From the IMG/VR virus record IMGVR_UViG_3300027749_002876, positions 434,001 to 498,000 of that record: a DNA stretch of 64,000 nucleotides, one strand, 5' to 3'. The notes beneath the pieces were generated by a model. That model was not told the origin of the DNA and made no database searches. It was given only the letters and a program-made list of their open reading frames with translations. The translations under genes and the position numbers were made by a program. Below, piece after piece: positions 29,868 to 39,309 of this stretch (the stretch's first letter is position 1; every line of letters starts with the position of its first letter).

Positions 29868-29911
29868 ACTTACTAAGACTCTATTATATACCCAAAACTA
29901 TTTATTGTCAA
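29868..29911 (-). promoter_or_regulatory. early promoter-leader repeat copy
   Basis: TTGACA 29911-29906, 17 nt, TATAAT 29888-29883. Confidence 0.85.
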
Positions 29912-29925
29912 ATTTTGGTAACCGT

Positions 29926-29947
29926 AAAAAAGCCCCGTTTCCAGGGC
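29926..29947 (-). terminator. intrinsic terminator after clpP
   Basis: Minus strand GCCCU-GGAAAC-GGGGC then UUUUUU. Confidence 0.7.
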
Positions 29948-34310: not shown

Positions 34311-35011
34311 TGAATATAGGGTTTGATGTTATTAGCGACCTTAATCTGGCCGCTGAAGATAGCTTTGATTGGGAAGATAAGGCAACAAGCCTATACCTAA
34401 TTATAGCAGGAAATATAAGCAATGATTTGCGAGTAATACATCAAACACTGGTTCATCTATCAAAATTTTATCAGGGTATCTTTTATATGCCCGGATCGTT
34501 AGAACACGATTCAATGCACCTTATAAAAAACAGATACAGAGAAATAGTAGAACTCTGTAGACCATTGAAAAAAGTAGCATGTCTATATAGATATGTAGTT
34601 ATCATCAATGGTGTTGCCGTTCTAGGAGCAAATGGATGGTACGGTAATAAAAATGATTTGACCGACTCTTTAGAGAAGCTACATCTACATTCACAGCAAG
34701 TAGAAGATGTAACTTATCTGGGTGCTAGTTTAGAAAGACTTCAACTACATCTGGACGTTAAGAAAATAATTGTAGTTACACATAGTTCCCCTAGTCCCGA
34801 GTTGTTCTTTAAAGAAAATCCACCCGATCTTGATGTTCAAATTCCAATGATGCAAGTATTAGGAAATGATTCAGAAAATAAAGTAGTTACTTGGGTTTAT
34901 GGTAGCTACAACAAAAATGTTGAAACTACTATCAATAACATAAATTATGTAAACAATTCATGTTATGATAAAAATCCTTATTGGCCTAAAAGAATTGATG
35001 TAGAAGTTTAA
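34310..35011 (+). CDS. degenerate calcineurin-like phosphoesterase fold protein
   Basis: SDLN, AGNI, GSLEH, VTHS, WVYGSYN occupy the positions of SDLH, GD, GNHE, H, HGH-H. Confidence 0.7.
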   Translation: MNIGFDVISDLNLAAEDSFDWEDKATSLYLIIAGNISNDLRVIHQTLVHLSKFYQGIFYMPGSLEHDSMHLIKNRYREIVELCRPLKKVACLYRYVVIINGVAVLGANGWYGNKNDLTDSLEKLHLHSQQVEDVTYLGASLERLQLHLDVKKIIVVTHSSPSPELFFKENPPDLDVQIPMMQVLGNDSENKVVTWVYGSYNKNVETTINNINYVNNSCYDKNPYWPKRIDVEV

Positions 35012-35316
35012 TTAACATCAGCTTCAACTTTAACCTGTAGAGGGAATCCCTGACTACGTGCATCAAGTGTAACTTCAATCCCGCGCTGTTCTGCAATCTC
35101 ATATGGTAATACAGCAACTATAGCACTACCCTGTTGATGAATATTTTCAGTTAGTGATGTAGCAGTATCTTGATTATAATTAAAATACCCGATTAAACTG
35201 TTAACCACAAAATTCATACTGGTAACTTCATCGTTCATATAAATGACTCTATAGAGTGGTGGTTCAGCAAGATTTATGTTTGGGCTGATTTTAATTTTAA
35301 TATCTGTTTTGGACAT
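35008..35316 (-). CDS. clpS: N-end-rule adaptor ClpS
   Basis: EPPLYRVI-MND--T-MNFVV; IH--G-AIV----YEIAE; FPLQV. Confidence 0.92.
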   Translation of the reverse strand: MSKTDIKIKISPNINLAEPPLYRVIYMNDEVTSMNFVVNSLIGYFNYNQDTATSLTENIHQQGSAIVAVLPYEIAEQRGIEVTLDARSQGFPLQVKVEADVN

Positions 35317-35333
35317 AGTGTTAAGTTAGTTAT

Positions 35334-35357
35334 ATGTGCGAGTGTTACCCCGCACAT
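35334..35357 (-). other. hairpin immediately downstream of a TAAATA motif (35364-35359) in the clpS leader
   Basis: ATGTGCG...CGCACAT inverted repeat. Confidence 0.5.
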
Positions 35358-35380
35358 TTATTTATATAAAATTTATTATA

Positions 35381-35830
35381 TTACTTAGTGTAATTTATTG
35401 CAATAGATTTCGGCTTCTTTTCTTCAGGAACTTTACGTTCTAAAAAGATAGAAAGAATTCCATTCTTTACTTCAGCATGTATAACCTCCACATGTTCAGC
35501 TAATGGGAATGTCTGTGTGAAATCTCTACTGCTTAGTCCTCGATGTAAATATTCATAATTAATTACTTCTTCACGTACCCTAGATCCAGATACAATTAGT
35601 GCATTGTTATCTAATTTAACATCTAATTCATCTTCACCAAACCCGGCTACTGCAATTTCAATGGTTACAGTTTCCTCACCTGTTTTAATTACATTGTGTG
35701 GTGGATAATTAGTATTAGTTTGTCCAGCTGTTAAACGCATTAGTTCGTCTAACATAGAATCAAATCCGATTCCAAATTTGTGTATAGATGGAATATCTAT
35801 AGCACGAAGGGTTAAAGTTTTTGTTGTCAT
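35381..35830 (-). CDS. ibpA: small heat-shock protein (Hsp20/IbpA family)
   Basis: IGFD, YPPHNVIK, IEIAVAGF, YLHRGLS-R-F---F-LAEHVEV--A---NGILSI-L. Confidence 0.95.
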   Translation of the reverse strand: MTTKTLTLRAIDIPSIHKFGIGFDSMLDELMRLTAGQTNTNYPPHNVIKTGEETVTIEIAVAGFGEDELDVKLDNNALIVSGSRVREEVINYEYLHRGLSSRDFTQTFPLAEHVEVIHAEVKNGILSIFLERKVPEEKKPKSIAINYTK

Positions 35831-35888
35831 GTTTTTCTCCTATTAAGCAAGTTTATGACTATCGGGCCCGCAGAATGCGGCACCCGAT
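35831..35888 (-). promoter_or_regulatory. ROSE-like RNA thermometer leader of hsp20
   Basis: mRNA: AUCGGGU-G-CCGCA-UUC-UGCGG-GCCCGAU hairpin, then CUU(G)CU-UAAU-AGGAG hairpin sequestering the SD. Confidence 0.7.
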
Positions 35889-35900
35889 TTTTTATCTAAT

Positions 35901-37796
35901 TTAATTAGATTCTTTTACTTCCGCATCAACTACATTGTCATTAGCATTCTTTGCTTCTGTAGCTTCTTTGGCTTTTTGTTCCTCATCATATTTGATTTTT
36001 GTGATGGGACTAATTGCTTCGTATAAGTCTTTGATTTTGTTTTCAATTTCTTCTACGTCTGTTCCAGCTAATGCAACTTCCAATGCATCAATGCTATTAG
36101 ATGCTTTTTCTTTTTCTTCTGCTGTAACACTATCTCCGTGCTTCTCGTAGTCTTTACGGAAACTGTTCAATGTTGATTCGCCGTTATTTTTTGCTTGAAT
36201 AAATTTAACTTGTTTGGCATCAGATTCAGCATTTGCTTCAGCATCATTAACCATTTGTTGAATTTCTCTTTCAGTTAGTCCTGAATCAGATTTGATAGTA
36301 ATCTTATTCTCTTTGCCTGTACCTTTATCTTTGGCACTTACATTAAGAATACCATTTGCATCAATATCTAACGTGACTTCAATTTGAGGAACACCACGCA
36401 TTGATGGAGGAATGCCCTCTAAATTAAATTCACCTAATATCTTATTGTATGTAAACAAATCACGTTCACCTTGTGCAACCTTAATAGTTACTGCAGGTTG
36501 ATTGTCTTCCGCTGTACTAAACACTTGACTATGCTTAGTTGGGATAGTTGTATTCTTCTTAATCAATTTAGTGAATACACCGCCACTTGTTTCAATACCC
36601 AAACTCAGTGGTGTCACATCCAATAACAATACGTCAGTGCGTTCACCGGCTAATACACTACCTTGAAGTGCCGCACCTGCCGCCACTGCTTCATCAGGAT
36701 TAACATCTTTGCGTGGTGCCTGACCAAACAACTTCTCAACTGTTTCTTGTACTTTGGGCATACGTGTCATACCACCAACAAGAATAACCTCATCAATGTC
36801 AGCAATTTTAACACCGGCATCTTGTATAGCTTGTTGACATGGTTTGATACTACGTTGAATCAATTCATCAACTAACAATTCTAATTTAGCACGACTTAAT
36901 TTAACATTTAAGTGTTTAGGTCCACTAACATCGGCTGTGATATATGGCAAGTTAACATCTGTTTGAGCACTACTACTTAACTCAATCTTTGCTTTCTCAG
37001 CCGCATCTTTCATCCGTTGCAATGCCAATACATCTTTGGTTAAGTCAATACCGTTGTCTTTCTTAAACTCATCAACTAAGAAGTCCATGATACGTTGGTC
37101 AAAGTCTTCGCCACCTAAGAACGTATCACCATTTGTTGATAATACTTCAATTTGTGTTTCACCATCAACATCTGCTAATTCAATAATACTTACATCAAAT
37201 GTACCACCACCTAAGTCATAAACAGCAATCTTACGGTCCGTTTTATCTTTTTTATCTACACCATATGCTAGTGCAGCCGCAGTAGGTTCGTTGATAATAC
37301 GCAATACTTCTAGTCCTGCAATACGTCCTGCGTCTTTAGTTGCTTGACGTTGGCTATCATTGAAGTAAGCTGGAACTGTAATAACTGCTTGAGTAACTGT
37401 TGTACCCAAATAGTCTTCAGCAGTCTTTTTCATCTTACGTAATACTTCAGCACTGATTTGCGGTGGTGCTAATTTTTGCCCATTAGACTCAACCCATGCA
37501 TCGCCATTGTCTGCCTTAATGATTTTGTATGGCATCAAGTCAATATCTTTTTGAACCGCTTGTTCTGTGAACTTACGACCAATCAATCGCTTGGCAGCAT
37601 AGATTGTATTCTTTGGGTTTGTAACTGATTGACGTTTGGCACTTGCACCTACTAATATCTCATCATTGGCATAGGCAACGATTGAGGGTGTAGTTCTTGC
37701 ACCTTCACTGTTTTCAATTATTTTGGGGATTCCGTTTTCAATAACGGCTACGCAGGAATTTGTGGTTCCGAGGTCTATTCCAATTACTTTGCTCAT
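35901..37796 (-). CDS. dnaK: chaperone DnaK (Hsp70)
   Basis: [41 protein letters not shown]; AAGGAG RBS supports the start at 37796 (631 aa). Confidence 0.98.
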
Positions 37797-37862
37797 TTTT
37801 TCTCCTTTATAAAGCAAGATTCTAATTTCAGACCCGATAATCGGCATCTGAGTACATATTTA
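37797..37862 (-). promoter_or_regulatory. TAAATA promoter plus ROSE-like RNA thermometer leader of dnaK
   Basis: TAAATA 37862-37857; mRNA UCAGAU-G-CCGA-UUA-UCGG-GUCUGA hairpin, then CUU(G)CUU-UAUA-AAGGAG. Confidence 0.7.
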
Positions 37863-37894
37863 TCATATTGATAATACGTAAAAAATTCTATTAT

Positions 37895-38110
37895 TTAAAA
37901 GTCTTTCTTAGGAAGACTTTGGTCTCTTAAAAATTTCTGCCACCTACGTTTAGCTTGACTTTTTGCTAGTTTACGTTTGATAGTAGGTTTTACGAATTCT
38001 TGACGGTCACGTACCTCTTGTAAGGTGCCGTAGTCTGCGATAACTTTTTTAAATTTCCGCAATGCTTTGTCTACGTTTCCATCCTGAACTAAAACTTTCC
38101 TACCTCTCAT
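37895..38110 (-). CDS. rpsU: 30S ribosomal protein bS21
   Basis: V-V---NVDKALRKFKK-----G-L-E-R-RQ-F-KPT-KRK; LPKKDF tail; ATGA-coupled to clpX. Confidence 0.9.
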   Translation of the reverse strand: MRGRKVLVQDGNVDKALRKFKKVIADYGTLQEVRDRQEFVKPTIKRKLAKSQAKRRWQKFLRDQSLPKKDF

Positions 38111-39309
38111 ACTATAACTGTTGGCTCCAAAATTTGTTTTCTATCTATATTTATGTTTAGTACATTATTATCACGGTACTTTTTAGTGTAGAACATGTGA
38201 GGCATCAATACACGCTCAATTTCAGTATGCAATCCACGTGCCCCTGTCTTAAGTGACAATGTATTCTCTGCTAATTGGTCTAGTGCATCTACCGTAAAGC
38301 TTAAATCAATGTTGTCCAAGCTTAACAAGTACTTGTATTGGTCAATATAGTTATTTTTGATTCCGGTCAATACTGTGATTAACTCATCTTTTGTCAAATC
38401 TTCCACATTGACTGTTGTAGTAAAACGACCAATGAACTCGGGAATCATACCAAATTTAACTAAGTCATCTGGACTAACATTACTTAAATTACCATCAGTG
38501 TTGGCGTTTTTAATTTGAGCGCCAAATCCAATACTTGTACCGTTTTCACGATTGCTAACAATACCCTTTAATCCAACAAATGCACCGCCAGCAATGAATA
38601 AGATATTCTTAGTATTGATTTCAATCATATCTCCACCGGGATGTTTACGTCCACCACCAGCTGGAATACGACAAACAGTACCTTCAACCAGTTTAAGTAA
38701 TGCTTGTTGAACACCTTCACCTGACACATCACGTGTGATATTAGCACTTTCACCTTTACGGGCAATCTTGTCAATCTCGTCAATGAATACAATGCCACGC
38801 TCGGCTAGTTTAACGTCACCACCTGCGGCATTGAGTAGCATACTAATCATTGATTCAACATCATCACCTACATAACCTGCTTCTGTAATACTTGTTGCAT
38901 CTGCTACGATGAAGGGCACTTTAAGATATTTTGCTACTGTTTTAGCAAGTAAGGTTTTACCTGAACCAGTTGGTCCTACTAGTAATACATTACCTTTAGA
39001 AATCTCTAAGTCTTTAGGTGGTTTGTTGATACGTTTATAGTGATTAGCAATAGCCACACTTAATACTTTTTTAGCATTGTGTTGACCAACTACATGAGTA
39101 TCAAGGAAATCTTTAATAGACTCTGGATCATATGATACTGCATCTTCTATTACAAATTCGTTCTTGGATTCATCGTCTACCATTAATGTATTGCATAATT
39201 CTACGCAATCACTACAGATAGCTACTTCTTCACTTACAATCAATTTTTTTACATTGTCTTTGTGGTTATCACAAAAGGAACAACGGTTGAGTTTATTTTC
39301 TGTTGACAT
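38107..39309 (-). CDS. clpX: ATP-dependent Clp protease ATPase subunit ClpX
   Basis: CSFC...CSDC zinc domain, [31 protein letters not shown] loop. Confidence 0.97.

What the first reader, a model, noticed from the sequence alone, without database searches (positions are those of the whole stretch)
35828..37864. Two covarying ROSE-like RNA thermometers on phage dnaK and hsp20
Seen: both 5' leaders share one architecture with different stem sequences. Each has a hairpin with a U-G pair and single G bulge around a CCG/CGG core (hsp20 AUCGGGU-G-CCGCA-UUC-UGCGG-GCCCGAU; dnaK UCAGAU-G-CCGA-UUA-UCGG-GUCUGA), a 9-nt A/U-rich linker, then CUUGCUU pairing with the AGGAG Shine-Dalgarno with a bulged G. 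Known: U(U/C)GCU opposite the SD is the hallmark of ROSE thermometers on alpha/gamma-proteobacterial small-HSP genes. Inference: the phage makes a dnaK-hsp20 mRNA from a TAAATA promoter and gates both chaperones by temperature, without relying on host sigma32. ROSE on dnaK, and in a phage, is not something I know to be described. The first hairpin could alternatively be an operator for autorepression, as IbpA represses its own mRNA in E. coli.
Basis: partly seen in the sequence, partly recalled or inferred. Interest (0 to 1): 0.82.

Follow-up and report, generated by a model that had tools for sequence, protein, structure and literature searches.

The report
ROSE-like thermometer leaders on phage chaperone genes
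A giant freshwater phage carries, in front of its own dnaK and hsp20 chaperone genes, the same small two-hairpin RNA leader that bacteria use as a heat-sensing translation switch (ROSE-like RNA thermometer), and related leaders sit on hsp20, dnaK and groESL genes of many other phages, including cultured ones.

Summary
Both leaders (minus strand: dnaK 37851..37797, hsp20 35888..35831) have a stable hairpin I (stem, U·G pair, bulged G, CC/GG core), then CUUGCUU placed to pair with the AGGAG Shine-Dalgarno around a bulged G.

- **Chance:** the motif occurs 2 times in the window against 0.03 expected, and 3 times in the 524-kb record, each time before a chaperone gene.
- **Rfam:** ROSE_3 is the only plausible family hit, full length for both, at 27.7 and 24.8 bits. 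That is below the gathering score of 43.
- **Pseudomonas link:** ROSE_3 scores 69 bits on a P. aeruginosa ibpA leader, whose short two-hairpin thermometer is experimentally validated. My phage-built model finds that same leader.
- **Covariation:** across 65 leaders from related viral contigs, hairpin I covaries strongly (9 of 11 pairs). The anti-SD motif is almost invariant, and the few variants seen keep the pairing.
- **Spread:** the element also precedes groES-groEL in relatives, and hsp20 in all five isolated phages tested (a Methylophilales phage, two cyanophages, a Sinorhizobium jumbo phage, phage C48C1).
- **Transcription:** lake metatranscriptome contigs end inside hairpin I of both leaders.

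Temperature gating itself is inferred, not shown. Verdict: a new member of a known kind, in a context (viruses, dnaK, groESL) I found no report of.

The parts
37857..37885 (-). Promoter-like region of the dnaK leader: T-run plus ACG (37885-37877) and TGATAAATA (37865-37857), ending 5 nt before hairpin I.
   Evidence: Sequence read. The composite TTTT[AG]CG-N12-18-ATAAATA occurs only 3 times in the genome, and 2 of those are ROSE leaders. ATAAATA is strand-specifically enriched upstream of ORFs (81 sense against 27 antisense). The motif is conserved in relatives. The RNA contig ends at 37843, with no RNA depth upstream.
37828..37851 (-). dnaK leader hairpin I: 6-bp stem ending in U·G, bulged G 37845, CCGA/UCGG inner stem, UUA loop. 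Stable (dG37 about -10.8 kcal/mol).
   Evidence: Folding. In dnaK leaders alone, 7 of the 11 hairpin I pairs are paired in every sequence with a letter on both sides; two outer pairs have mismatches (8/11, 9/11) and the innermost pairs have gaps. Compensatory changes are present. Whole-set covariation.
37801..37819 (-). dnaK leader hairpin II, the proposed thermosensor. UCUU-G-CUU (37819-37812) pairs with AAGGAGA (37807-37801), with G37815 bulged and loop UAUA. The SD AGGAG is 37806-37802.
   Evidence: This is the MFE structure when the leader is folded without coding sequence. dG is -5.3 kcal/mol at 10 C, -3.1 at 25 C and -1.4 at 37 C. The motif is invariant in 11 dnaK leaders.
35901..37796 (-). 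dnaK (Hsp70), 631 aa.
   Evidence: Pfam HSP70, E 1.4e-255. It is the only copy in the record.
35861..35888 (-). hsp20 leader hairpin I: AUCGGGU stem ending in U·G, bulged G 35881, CCGCA/UGCGG inner stem, UUC loop. Very stable (dG37 about -18.5 kcal/mol). It starts 12 nt after the dnaK stop codon.
   Evidence: The RNA contig of run X8 ends at 35884, with no coverage of the dnaK 3' end.
35826..35859 (-). hsp20 leader hairpin II. The outer helix is GUCAU (35859-35855) with AUGAC (35830-35826), which sequesters the start codon. The inner helix is CUU-G-CU (35851-35846) with AGGAG (35841-35837), with G35848 bulged.
   Evidence: The outer helix is predicted by ViennaRNA. Outer plus inner dG is -8.5 kcal/mol at 10 C and -2.9 at 37 C. 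The outer helix is paired in 66-100% of hsp20 leaders depending on the pair, with variants such as UGACA/UGUCA.
35381..35830 (-). hsp20 (IbpA-like small heat-shock protein), 149 aa. The C-terminal I-A-I fits the IX(I/V) motif.
   Evidence: Pfam HSP20, E 3.5e-16. Translation.
37895..39309 (-). Upstream neighbours clpX (39309-38107) and ribosomal protein bS21 (38110-37895). Together with clpS downstream (35316-35008) they form a proteostasis gene cluster. They are not part of the element itself.
   Evidence: Pfam. The same order clpX-S21-[leader]-hsp20-clpS appears in the second copy and in relatives.

Best explanation
Both leaders are short, two-hairpin ROSE-like RNA thermometers, homologous to the ibpA leaders of proteobacteria.

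Proposed mechanism:
1. The phage transcribes dnaK-hsp20 from its own common ATAAATA-type promoter, so the mRNA starts at or just before hairpin I.
2. Hairpin I is a stable structure that does not respond to temperature. It sits at the 5' end and acts as a folding anchor and/or 5'-end protector.
3. Hairpin II is weak. CUUGCU pairs imperfectly, with a bulged G and a U·G pair, with the AGGAG Shine-Dalgarno. In hsp20, GUCAU additionally pairs with the AUGAC start region.
4. At low lake temperatures this limits 30S binding. Warming melts hairpin II and raises translation of DnaK and Hsp20, without needing a change in transcription.

What is shown: the sequence and architecture; homology to ROSE_3 at model level in both directions; covariation of hairpin I; near-invariance of the anti-SD motif; transcription in situ, with RNA contigs ending at hairpin I.

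What is inferred: that hairpin II forms in vivo; that it melts in the physiological range; that translation is temperature-dependent; and the role of hairpin I.
For: Family identity:
- Rfam ROSE_3 gives full-length hits of 27.7 bits (E 0.005) and 24.8 bits (E 0.026), and no other plausible family.
- ROSE_3 scores 69.2 bits, above its gathering score of 43, on a P. aeruginosa ibpA leader.
- That class is experimentally validated as a two-hairpin thermometer, with a GC-rich hairpin I that does not respond to temperature and a melting hairpin II (PMC3669281).
- Phage-built model R2 finds the Pseudomonas leader in return (23.9 bits, E 3.7e-4).

Structure and conservation:
- In 65 leaders, 95.1% of cells are paired and 15 of 21 pairs show double changes.
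- The covariation score is 0.422 against 0.136 in shuffles (0 of 500 reach it) and at most 0.09 with slid partners.
- RNAalifold predicts hairpin I de novo.
- U·G pairs (55 of 65) and the one-sided bulge indicate RNA on the sense strand rather than a DNA operator.
- CUUGCU opposite AGGAG is 99.7% paired. The natural variants are exactly the U(U/C)GCU alternatives: AUCGCU in L031, UCUCGCU in cyanophages.

Specificity and spread:
- There are only three hits in the 524-kb record, all before chaperone genes.
- The same module precedes dnaK in 16 related loci (11 distinct leader sequences), groES-groEL in three, and hsp20 in 5 of 5 isolated phages tested, each time ending at the start codon.

Thermodynamics:
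- Hairpin I dG37 is -10.8 and -18.5 kcal/mol.
- Hairpin II dG for dnaK and hsp20 is -5.3 and -8.5 at 10 C, and -1.4 and -2.9 at 37 C. The dnaK hairpin II is weaker than the validated Pa hairpin II (-6.5 at 25 C, -4.4 at 37 C).

Transcription and translation context:
- Exact metatranscriptome contigs cover 37078-37843 and 35814-36786, with zero RNA depth over 37980-38595.
- The phage uses SD-led initiation generally.
Against: - Both Rfam hits are below the gathering score (43).
- The SD/anti-SD helix shows almost no covariation, because both sides are constrained. RNAalifold does not predict it.
- Nearest-neighbour partition functions showed little temperature dependence of SD accessibility.
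- When coding sequence is included, they prefer a different partner for the dnaK anti-SD: UUGCUU with G-AGCAA of the start codon and codons 2-3.
- The inner hsp20 helix alone is marginal, with dG near 0 between roughly 20 and 35 C depending on the flanking bases included.
- No experiment links temperature to output.
- Contig ends are only rough proxies for 5' ends.
Confidence: 0.7

Rival explanations
1. Aggregation-sensing feedback rather than, or on top of, direct thermosensing. The phage's IbpA-like Hsp20 binds the shared leader (the conserved hairpin I core and/or hairpin II) and represses translation of hsp20 and dnaK. When Hsp20 is drawn onto misfolded proteins, the repression is lifted. 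This can coexist with the thermometer.
For: - E. coli IbpA represses its own mRNA and the ibpB and rpoH mRNAs through stem-loops in the 5' UTR, and needs its IX(I/V) motif to do so (PMC10410725).
- The phage Hsp20 ends in ...S-I-A-I-N-Y..., which fits that motif.
- Hairpin I keeps specific nucleotides, not just pairing. U·G, the bulged G and GCC/GGG are conserved from Pseudomonas to phages.
- The same leader is shared by the three chaperone operons.
Against: - No binding data exist for any phage sHsp.
- In E. coli the dnaK and groES UTRs are not IbpA targets.
- In Pseudomonas, hairpin II alone confers thermoregulation in vitro, without any protein.
Confidence: 0.3
2. The leader serves only as a 5' stabiliser plus a strong ribosome binding site. 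Hairpin I protects the mRNA 5' end, or marks a processing site between dnaK and hsp20. Hairpin II is too weak to matter, and CUUGCU is an inherited remnant.
For: - Hairpin II is marginal by nearest-neighbour energies and is not recovered by RNAalifold.
- RNA contigs end inside hairpin I in both leaders.
- Krajewski et al. also suggest a stabilising role for hairpin I.
Against: - A remnant would not stay invariant across leaders whose spacers, loops and stems have all diverged.
- The only variants seen keep the pairing with the SD.
- The hsp20 GUCAU/AUGAC helix shifts in a compensatory way (UGACA/UGUCA in L039, AGUCA/UGACU in L017 and L049).
Confidence: 0.15
3. The inverted repeat is a DNA operator for a heat-shock repressor (like CIRCE/HrcA or HAIR/HspR), or an intrinsic terminator or attenuator.
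For: - An inverted repeat lies directly downstream of a promoter on chaperone genes.
- The hsp20 hairpin lies just after the dnaK stop codon.
Against: - Arm sequences are not conserved, only their complementarity. Protein operators usually conserve sequence.
- U·G pairs and the one-sided bulge work only as RNA on the sense strand.
- No U-tract follows either hairpin on the sense strand, and the terminator scan finds nothing there.
- An RNA contig reads through the dnaK-hsp20 junction.
Confidence: 0.03

Closest known systems
Short two-hairpin ROSE-like RNA thermometers of Pseudomonas ibpA (Rfam ROSE_3, RF02523; Krajewski et al. 2013, PMC3669281)
   Same: - Similar length: 55-60 nt here, 61-62 nt in Pseudomonas.
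- Hairpin I has a stem, a U·G pair, a bulged G and a GCC...GGG core (the ROSE_3 consensus has GAUGCCGA...CGGGUC).
- A short single-stranded linker follows.
- Hairpin II has U(U/C)GCU opposite the SD, with a bulged G.
- It sits on an IbpA-type sHsp gene.
- Hairpin I is stable and hairpin II is labile.
   Different: - Scores are below ROSE_3's gathering score (24.8-34.1 against 43).
- Hairpin II is shorter and AU-rich and lacks the flanking G-C clamps stressed for Pseudomonas. It is weaker by about 3 kcal/mol at equal temperature.
- The hsp20 version adds a helix that sequesters the AUG, whereas the Pseudomonas AUG is unpaired.
- It is encoded by viruses, follows a phage ATAAATA-type promoter rather than a sigma-32 promoter, and also sits on dnaK and groESL.
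Classical ROSE elements of rhizobia and other alpha-proteobacteria (Rfam ROSE, RF00435) and the E. coli/Salmonella ibpA element
   Same: - The U(U/C)GCU anti-SD with a bulged G.
- The SD, and in some cases the AUG, lie in the 3' hairpin.
- They sit on sHsp genes.
- The closest bacterial Hsp20 relatives of the phage protein are alphaproteobacterial (35-46% identity). Several of those carry a similar two-hairpin leader (R2 23-33 bits).
   Different: - Those elements have 3-4 hairpins and are 70-120 nt long (PMC3669281).
- The classical ROSE model RF00435 (accession from memory), and every ROSE model other than ROSE_3, gave no hit at E up to 10 in the region.
IbpA self-repression through its 5' UTR (Miwa and Taguchi; PMC10410725)
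   Same: An IbpA-like protein with an IX(I/V) motif is encoded behind a structured ROSE-type leader.
   Different: It was not tested here. In E. coli the dnaK and groES UTRs are not targets, whereas in these phages dnaK and groESL carry the same leader as hsp20.
Phage lambda cIII mRNA thermosensor (from my own knowledge, not checked here)
   Same: A phage mRNA whose translation depends on temperature through alternative RNA structures.
   Different: It is unrelated in sequence and architecture, switches between two structures rather than melting like a zipper, and is not on a chaperone gene.

Membership tests
ROSE-like RNA thermometers (general definition) | Located in the 5' leader of a heat-shock gene (typically a small HSP gene). 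| tested here: met
   The leaders lie directly upstream of hsp20 (Pfam HSP20) and dnaK (Pfam HSP70). dnaK is not a typical ROSE target.
ROSE-like RNA thermometers (general definition) | U(U/C)GCU motif placed to pair imperfectly with the SD, with a bulged G, in the 3'-proximal hairpin. | tested here: met
   CUUGCUU and AGGAG are in both leaders. The ROSE-register hairpin is the MFE for the dnaK leader. The motif is near-invariant in 64 leaders, and the UCGCU variant occurs in L031 and in cyanophages.
ROSE-like RNA thermometers (general definition) | One or more 5' hairpins upstream of the SD hairpin (2-4 hairpins in total). | tested here: met
   Hairpin I is supported by covariation at 9 of 11 pairs and is predicted de novo by RNAalifold.
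ROSE-like RNA thermometers (general definition) | Temperature-dependent melting of the SD hairpin, and temperature-dependent translation. | not testable with these tools
   Only nearest-neighbour energies are available. Hairpin II dG goes from -5.3 and -8.5 kcal/mol at 10 C to -1.4 and -2.9 at 37 C. The partition-function test was uninformative.
Rfam ROSE_3 (RF02523) | Score at or above the curated gathering score (43 bits). | tested here: not met
   Scores are 27.7 bits (hsp20) and 24.8 bits (dnaK), both full length over model positions 1-69. The positive control, a P. aeruginosa ibpA leader, scores 69.2 bits.
Rfam ROSE_3 (RF02523) | Shared architecture and reciprocal recognition by an independent model. 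| tested here: met
   The alignment to the ROSE_3 consensus covers both hairpins, including the GAUGCCGA...CGGGUC core. Phage-built model R2 hits the Pseudomonas leader at 23.9 bits, E 3.7e-4; the next hit in that locus scores 5.2 bits.
CIRCE/HAIR-type DNA operators | Conserved arm sequence of the inverted repeat, which is symmetric at the DNA level. | tested here: not met
   The arms covary instead of being conserved. There are U·G pairs in 55 of 65 leaders and a one-sided bulge.
Intrinsic terminator | GC-rich hairpin followed by a U-tract on the transcribed strand. | tested here: not met
   There is no U-tract after either hairpin on the minus strand. The scan finds none there. An RNA contig spans the junction.

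The most novel reading that the evidence does not exclude
A virus-encoded, post-transcriptional heat-shock regulon. One portable module (a phage ATAAATA-type promoter plus a ROSE-like leader) has been placed on hsp20, dnaK and groESL in a large group of aquatic phages, and sits on hsp20 of T4-like cyanophages and Methylophilales phages. Chaperone output during infection would then follow temperature, and possibly protein aggregation through feedback by the phage's IbpA-like Hsp20 on the shared leader. This would work independently of the host's sigma-32 or HrcA circuits.
Probability: 0.3. Interest if true: 0.8.

Novelty: new member of a known kind. Interest (0 to 1): 0.62.

Why it matters
- **Scope of ROSE elements:** they are textbook regulators of small heat-shock genes in alpha- and gamma-proteobacteria. 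Here the same device is carried by viruses. In some lineages it has been copied onto dnaK and groESL, which are not classical ROSE targets.
- **Annotation gap:** none of these leaders passes Rfam's threshold, so standard annotation misses them.
- **Ecological relevance:** hsp20 was found in about 460 cyanophage records in the phage collection, and the leader was present in all five isolated phages I tested. The idea that infection-time chaperone supply is set by water temperature therefore becomes directly testable in cultured phage-host pairs (Melnitz/Methylophilales H5P1, S-WAM1 and S-CAM7/Synechococcus, Phosso/Sinorhizobium).
- **Thermometer design:** the phage hairpin II is predicted to be weaker than the Pseudomonas one. 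That would suit a lower temperature set-point and gives a natural series for studying how thermometers are tuned.

Tried and rejected
- **Rfam at gathering thresholds:** it found nothing in the window or in 20 bacterial hsp20 loci. Only the E-value mode revealed ROSE_3.
- **MAFFT alignment of 63 leaders:** it misaligned the SD region. I replaced it with a covariance-model alignment.
- **MAFFT alignment of dnaK leaders only:** it shifted one row. I used the dnaK rows of the model alignment instead.
- **Partition-function test of SD accessibility against temperature:** it was uninformative and dominated by alternative pairings. I report energies of fixed structures instead.
- **ROSE_3 search in 151 genomes of the class of a gammaproteobacterial locus:** it gave no hit above cut-off and no taxon names. 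The Pseudomonas link was established with L155 instead.
- **T4 MotA-box reading of TTGCTTTA:** rejected. A promoter there would start inside the gene and skip the SD and AUG.
- **Sigma-70 consensus promoter and terminator scans:** not above chance.
- **Model hit L061:3792-3855 (minus strand):** spurious, with no anti-SD or SD.
- **Literature searches:** I searched for ROSE-like elements in phages, on dnaK or groES, or on cyanophage hsp20, and found no report. That library is incomplete, so this is not proof of absence.
- **'Moraphage' paper (PMC12619734):** it concerns another lineage and does not mention thermometers.
Full report
**1. What is there**

All genes in the region are on the minus strand: clpX (39309-38107), ribosomal protein bS21 (38110-37895), dnaK (37796-35901), hsp20 (35830-35381) and clpS (35316-35008). 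These are confirmed by ORF listing and Pfam.

- dnaK: UCAGAU-G-CCGA-UUA-UCGG-GUCUGA (37851-37828), a 9-nt linker, CUUGCUU (37818-37812), AGGAG (37806-37802), ATG 37796.
- hsp20: AUCGGGU-G-CCGCA-UUC-UGCGG-GCCCGAU (35888-35861), AGUCAUAAA, CUUGCUU (35851-35845), AGGAG (35841-35837), ATG 35830.

CTTGCTT-N2-8-AGGAG occurs twice in the window against 0.03 expected.

The window lies at 434001-498000 of a 524,565-bp IMG/VR virus record with 36.7% GC. A third copy precedes a second hsp20 at about 64 kb of that record. It sits in a diverged syntenic block, clpX-S21-hsp20-clpS, that lacks dnaK. Its hairpin I (GUAGAU-G-CUCA-UGG-UGAG-GUCUAC) is again compensatory.

**2. What family it belongs to**

At gathering thresholds Rfam reports nothing. 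In E-value mode the only plausible family is ROSE_3 (RF02523), and it matches both leaders over the whole model. Scores are 27.7 bits (E 0.005) and 24.8 bits (E 0.026), against a gathering score of 43.

These are the U·G pair, the bulged G and the CCG/CGG core.

As a positive control I took a P. aeruginosa ibpA leader, L155:531-597, from an 'unverified' phage record. It scores 69.2 bits with ROSE_3. So ROSE_3 represents the short two-hairpin ibpA thermometers of Pseudomonas.

Those thermometers were validated by reporter assays, toeprinting and structure probing. Hairpin I is GC-rich and does not respond to temperature. Hairpin II melts, and it is sufficient on its own for thermoregulation (PMC3669281).

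**3. Comparative evidence**

The hsp20 protein has 320 relatives in IMG/VR. Almost every upstream region shows the same module: ATAAATA-type promoter motif, hairpin I, (GUCAU), CUUGCUU, AGGAG.

The two exceptions (L016, L082) have hsp20 following dnaK with no leader of its own, and there the dnaK leader carries the element. Sixteen loci, with 11 distinct sequences, carry the module in front of dnaK.

I built a covariance model from 16 leaders and realigned 65. The pair counts are as follows.

| Measure | Value |
|---|---|
| Cells paired | 95.1% |
| Pairs with changes on both sides | 15 of 21 |
| Covariation score | 0.422 |
| Same score in shuffles | 0.136 (0 of 500 reach the observed value) |
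| Same score with slid partners | at most 0.09 |
| Hairpin I pairs that covary | 9 of 11 |
| Hairpin I cells paired | 97.3% |

RNAalifold predicts hairpin I on its own. The dnaK leaders taken alone also keep hairpin I through compensatory changes.

The anti-SD/SD helix is 99.7% paired but almost invariant. It is therefore supported by conservation and homology, not by covariation, and RNAalifold does not call it. The variants that do occur are the textbook U(U/C)GCU alternatives.

In hsp20 leaders an outer helix, GUCAU/AUGAC, covers the start codon. It shifts in a compensatory way in a few lineages (UGACA/UGUCA, AGUCA/UGACU).

**4. Specificity and spread**

The refined model R2 finds only the three chaperone leaders in the whole record. 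In relatives where groES-groEL occupies the place of dnaK, the same promoter, hairpin I and CUUGCUU-SD module precedes a short ORF of 11-34 codons upstream of groES.

In isolated phages R2 hits exactly at the hsp20 start codon in 5 of 5 tested.

| Phage | R2 score (bits) |
|---|---|
| Methylophilales phage Melnitz-3 | 54.9 |
| Synechococcus phage S-CAM7 | 29.1 |
| Synechococcus phage S-WAM1 | 27.2 |
| Sinorhizobium jumbo phage Phosso | 25.7 |
| Phage C48C1 | 22.5 |

The next-best hits in those loci score at most 11.7 bits. ROSE_3 scores Melnitz at 34.1 bits and C48C1 at 26.8 bits, again below threshold.

The nearest bacterial Hsp20 relatives are alphaproteobacterial (35-46% identity). Several of them have the same two-hairpin leader. 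R2 also recognises the Pseudomonas leader (23.9 bits, E 3.7e-4).

**5. Transcription**

The dnaK hairpin is preceded by a T-run, ACG and TGATAAATA.
- The composite occurs only three times in the genome.
- The ATAAATA core is enriched in the sense orientation upstream of ORFs (81 against 27).
- TGATAAATA occurs 44 times against 22 expected.

It therefore looks like a general phage promoter. Its resemblance to the T4-type late promoter TATAAATA is my inference from textbook knowledge. No sigma-70 consensus or sigma-32-like promoter stands out.

In a lake metatranscriptome (run X2), exact contigs cover 37078-37843, 35814-36786 and 35176-35837. RNA depth is zero over 37980-38595, so the RNA starts at or just upstream of hairpin I and runs through the dnaK-hsp20 junction.

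In a second run (X8), an exact contig covers 35517-35884 while the dnaK 3' end has no coverage. This suggests hsp20 RNA whose 5' end lies at its own hairpin I, through a separate promoter or processing. These are assembled contigs, so the ends are approximate.

**6. Energetics**

The figures below are dG in kcal/mol for fixed structures.

| Structure | 10 C | 25 C | 37 C |
|---|---|---|---|
| Hairpin I, dnaK | -16.6 | -13.4 | -10.8 |
| Hairpin I, hsp20 | -26.8 | -22.2 | -18.5 |
| Hairpin II, dnaK | -5.3 | -3.1 | -1.4 |
| Hairpin II, hsp20 (outer plus inner) | -8.5 | -5.4 | -2.9 |
| Hairpin II, P. aeruginosa ibpA (validated) | -9.1 | -6.5 | -4.4 |

The design, a stable anchor plus a labile SD hairpin, is the same as in Pseudomonas. 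The lower stability would fit a lower set-point in lake water, but that is an inference.

A partition-function test gave no clear temperature dependence. With coding sequence included, the model prefers pairing of the dnaK UUGCUU with G-AGCAA (the G of the start codon plus codons 2-3). That pairing would also block initiation. Nearest-neighbour models do not capture the non-canonical pairs known from ROSE, so this test is inconclusive.

**7. Interpretation**

Best explanation (0.7): short ROSE-like RNA thermometers that gate translation of phage DnaK and Hsp20.

A compatible rival (0.3) is feedback by the IbpA-like phage Hsp20 on the shared leader, as shown for E. coli IbpA (PMC10410725). The conserved nucleotides in hairpin I and the C-terminal I-A-I motif make this worth testing.

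A purely stabilising role (0.15) and DNA-operator or terminator readings (0.03) are disfavoured, for the reasons given under the rivals.

**8. Novelty**

The kind is known. I found no report of ROSE-like elements in phages, or on dnaK or groESL, in the searchable library, and Rfam thresholds do not pick these leaders up. I file the element as a new member of a known kind, with an unreported host class and unreported target genes.

Noticed in passing
whole record G000 (window = 434001-498000); G000 172924-177012 and 520477-524565: The 524-kb record may be a chimera. G000 172924-177012 repeats at 520477-524565 at 99.6% identity (a direct repeat, like the terminal repeat of a genome of about 347.5 kb). 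In addition, 15-170 kb is colinear but inverted with 514-362 kb at about 70-90% identity. The 'second hsp20 locus' at about 64 kb may therefore belong to a related co-occurring phage rather than being a paralogue.
   Followed up: partly
window 35851 joined to 37895 (DNA run X1): In the probable source metagenome, one DNA contig (depth about 25 against about 41) skips 2,043 bp and joins the S21 stop directly to the hsp20 leader. This is a variant or relative without dnaK, like the 64-kb copy.
   Followed up: no
L017:803-902 with groES at 973-1260 and groEL at 1253-2896; also L080:822-917 and L049:817-970: In relatives, the same promoter plus ROSE-like leader is followed by a short ORF (14, 11 and 34 codons). 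In L017, groES-groEL follows it; the downstream genes in L080 and L049 were not checked. This may be a leader peptide or a remnant of an hsp20 start.
   Followed up: partly
window 37817-37812 with 37794-37789: The dnaK anti-SD UUGCUU is also complementary to G-AGCAA (the last base of the AUG plus codons 2-3). In the one lineage where the serine codon differs (AUGUCAAAGCA), AAGCA keeps complementarity to UGCUU. ViennaRNA prefers this pairing when coding sequence is included.
   Followed up: partly
window 35861-35894, plus strand: Read on the plus strand, the hsp20 hairpin I is followed by TTTTTT, which is the shape of an intrinsic terminator for transcription antisense to hsp20. An A-run before hairpin I recurs in several relatives whose hsp20 lies downstream of dnaK.
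   Followed up: no
window 37895-38110 (minus strand) and neighbours 35008-39309: A phage-encoded ribosomal protein bS21 sits between clpX and the dnaK leader, inside a conserved cluster clpX-S21-(dnaK or groESL)-hsp20-clpS. The record also has three J-domain genes.
   Followed up: partly
window about 29899-29929, minus strand (G000 463929): This is the third and only other copy of the composite promoter motif TTTTACG-N-ATAAATA in the genome. It lies upstream of an unexamined gene and has no ROSE-like leader.
   Followed up: no
L091 / G005 contigs C31, C57 and C110: A 'Haliscomenobacter sp.' MAG holds three contigs with strong hits to the phage leader model (up to 72.8 bits) and a 66%-identical hsp20. 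These are probably jumbo-phage contigs binned with the MAG, which makes them either a host hint or contamination.
   Followed up: partly
L144:1465-1552 (Synechococcus phage S-CAM7, KU686213.1): The annotated hsp20 start is probably 87 nt too far downstream. An in-frame ATG with AGGAG and the ROSE-like leader lies at locus position 1465.
   Followed up: partly
L155 (OQ572409.1, 'UNVERIFIED: Pseudomonas phage Y7'): This 22.6-kb record carries an ibpA-like gene with a canonical ROSE_3 leader at 69 bits. It may be P. aeruginosa chromosomal DNA rather than phage DNA.
   Followed up: no
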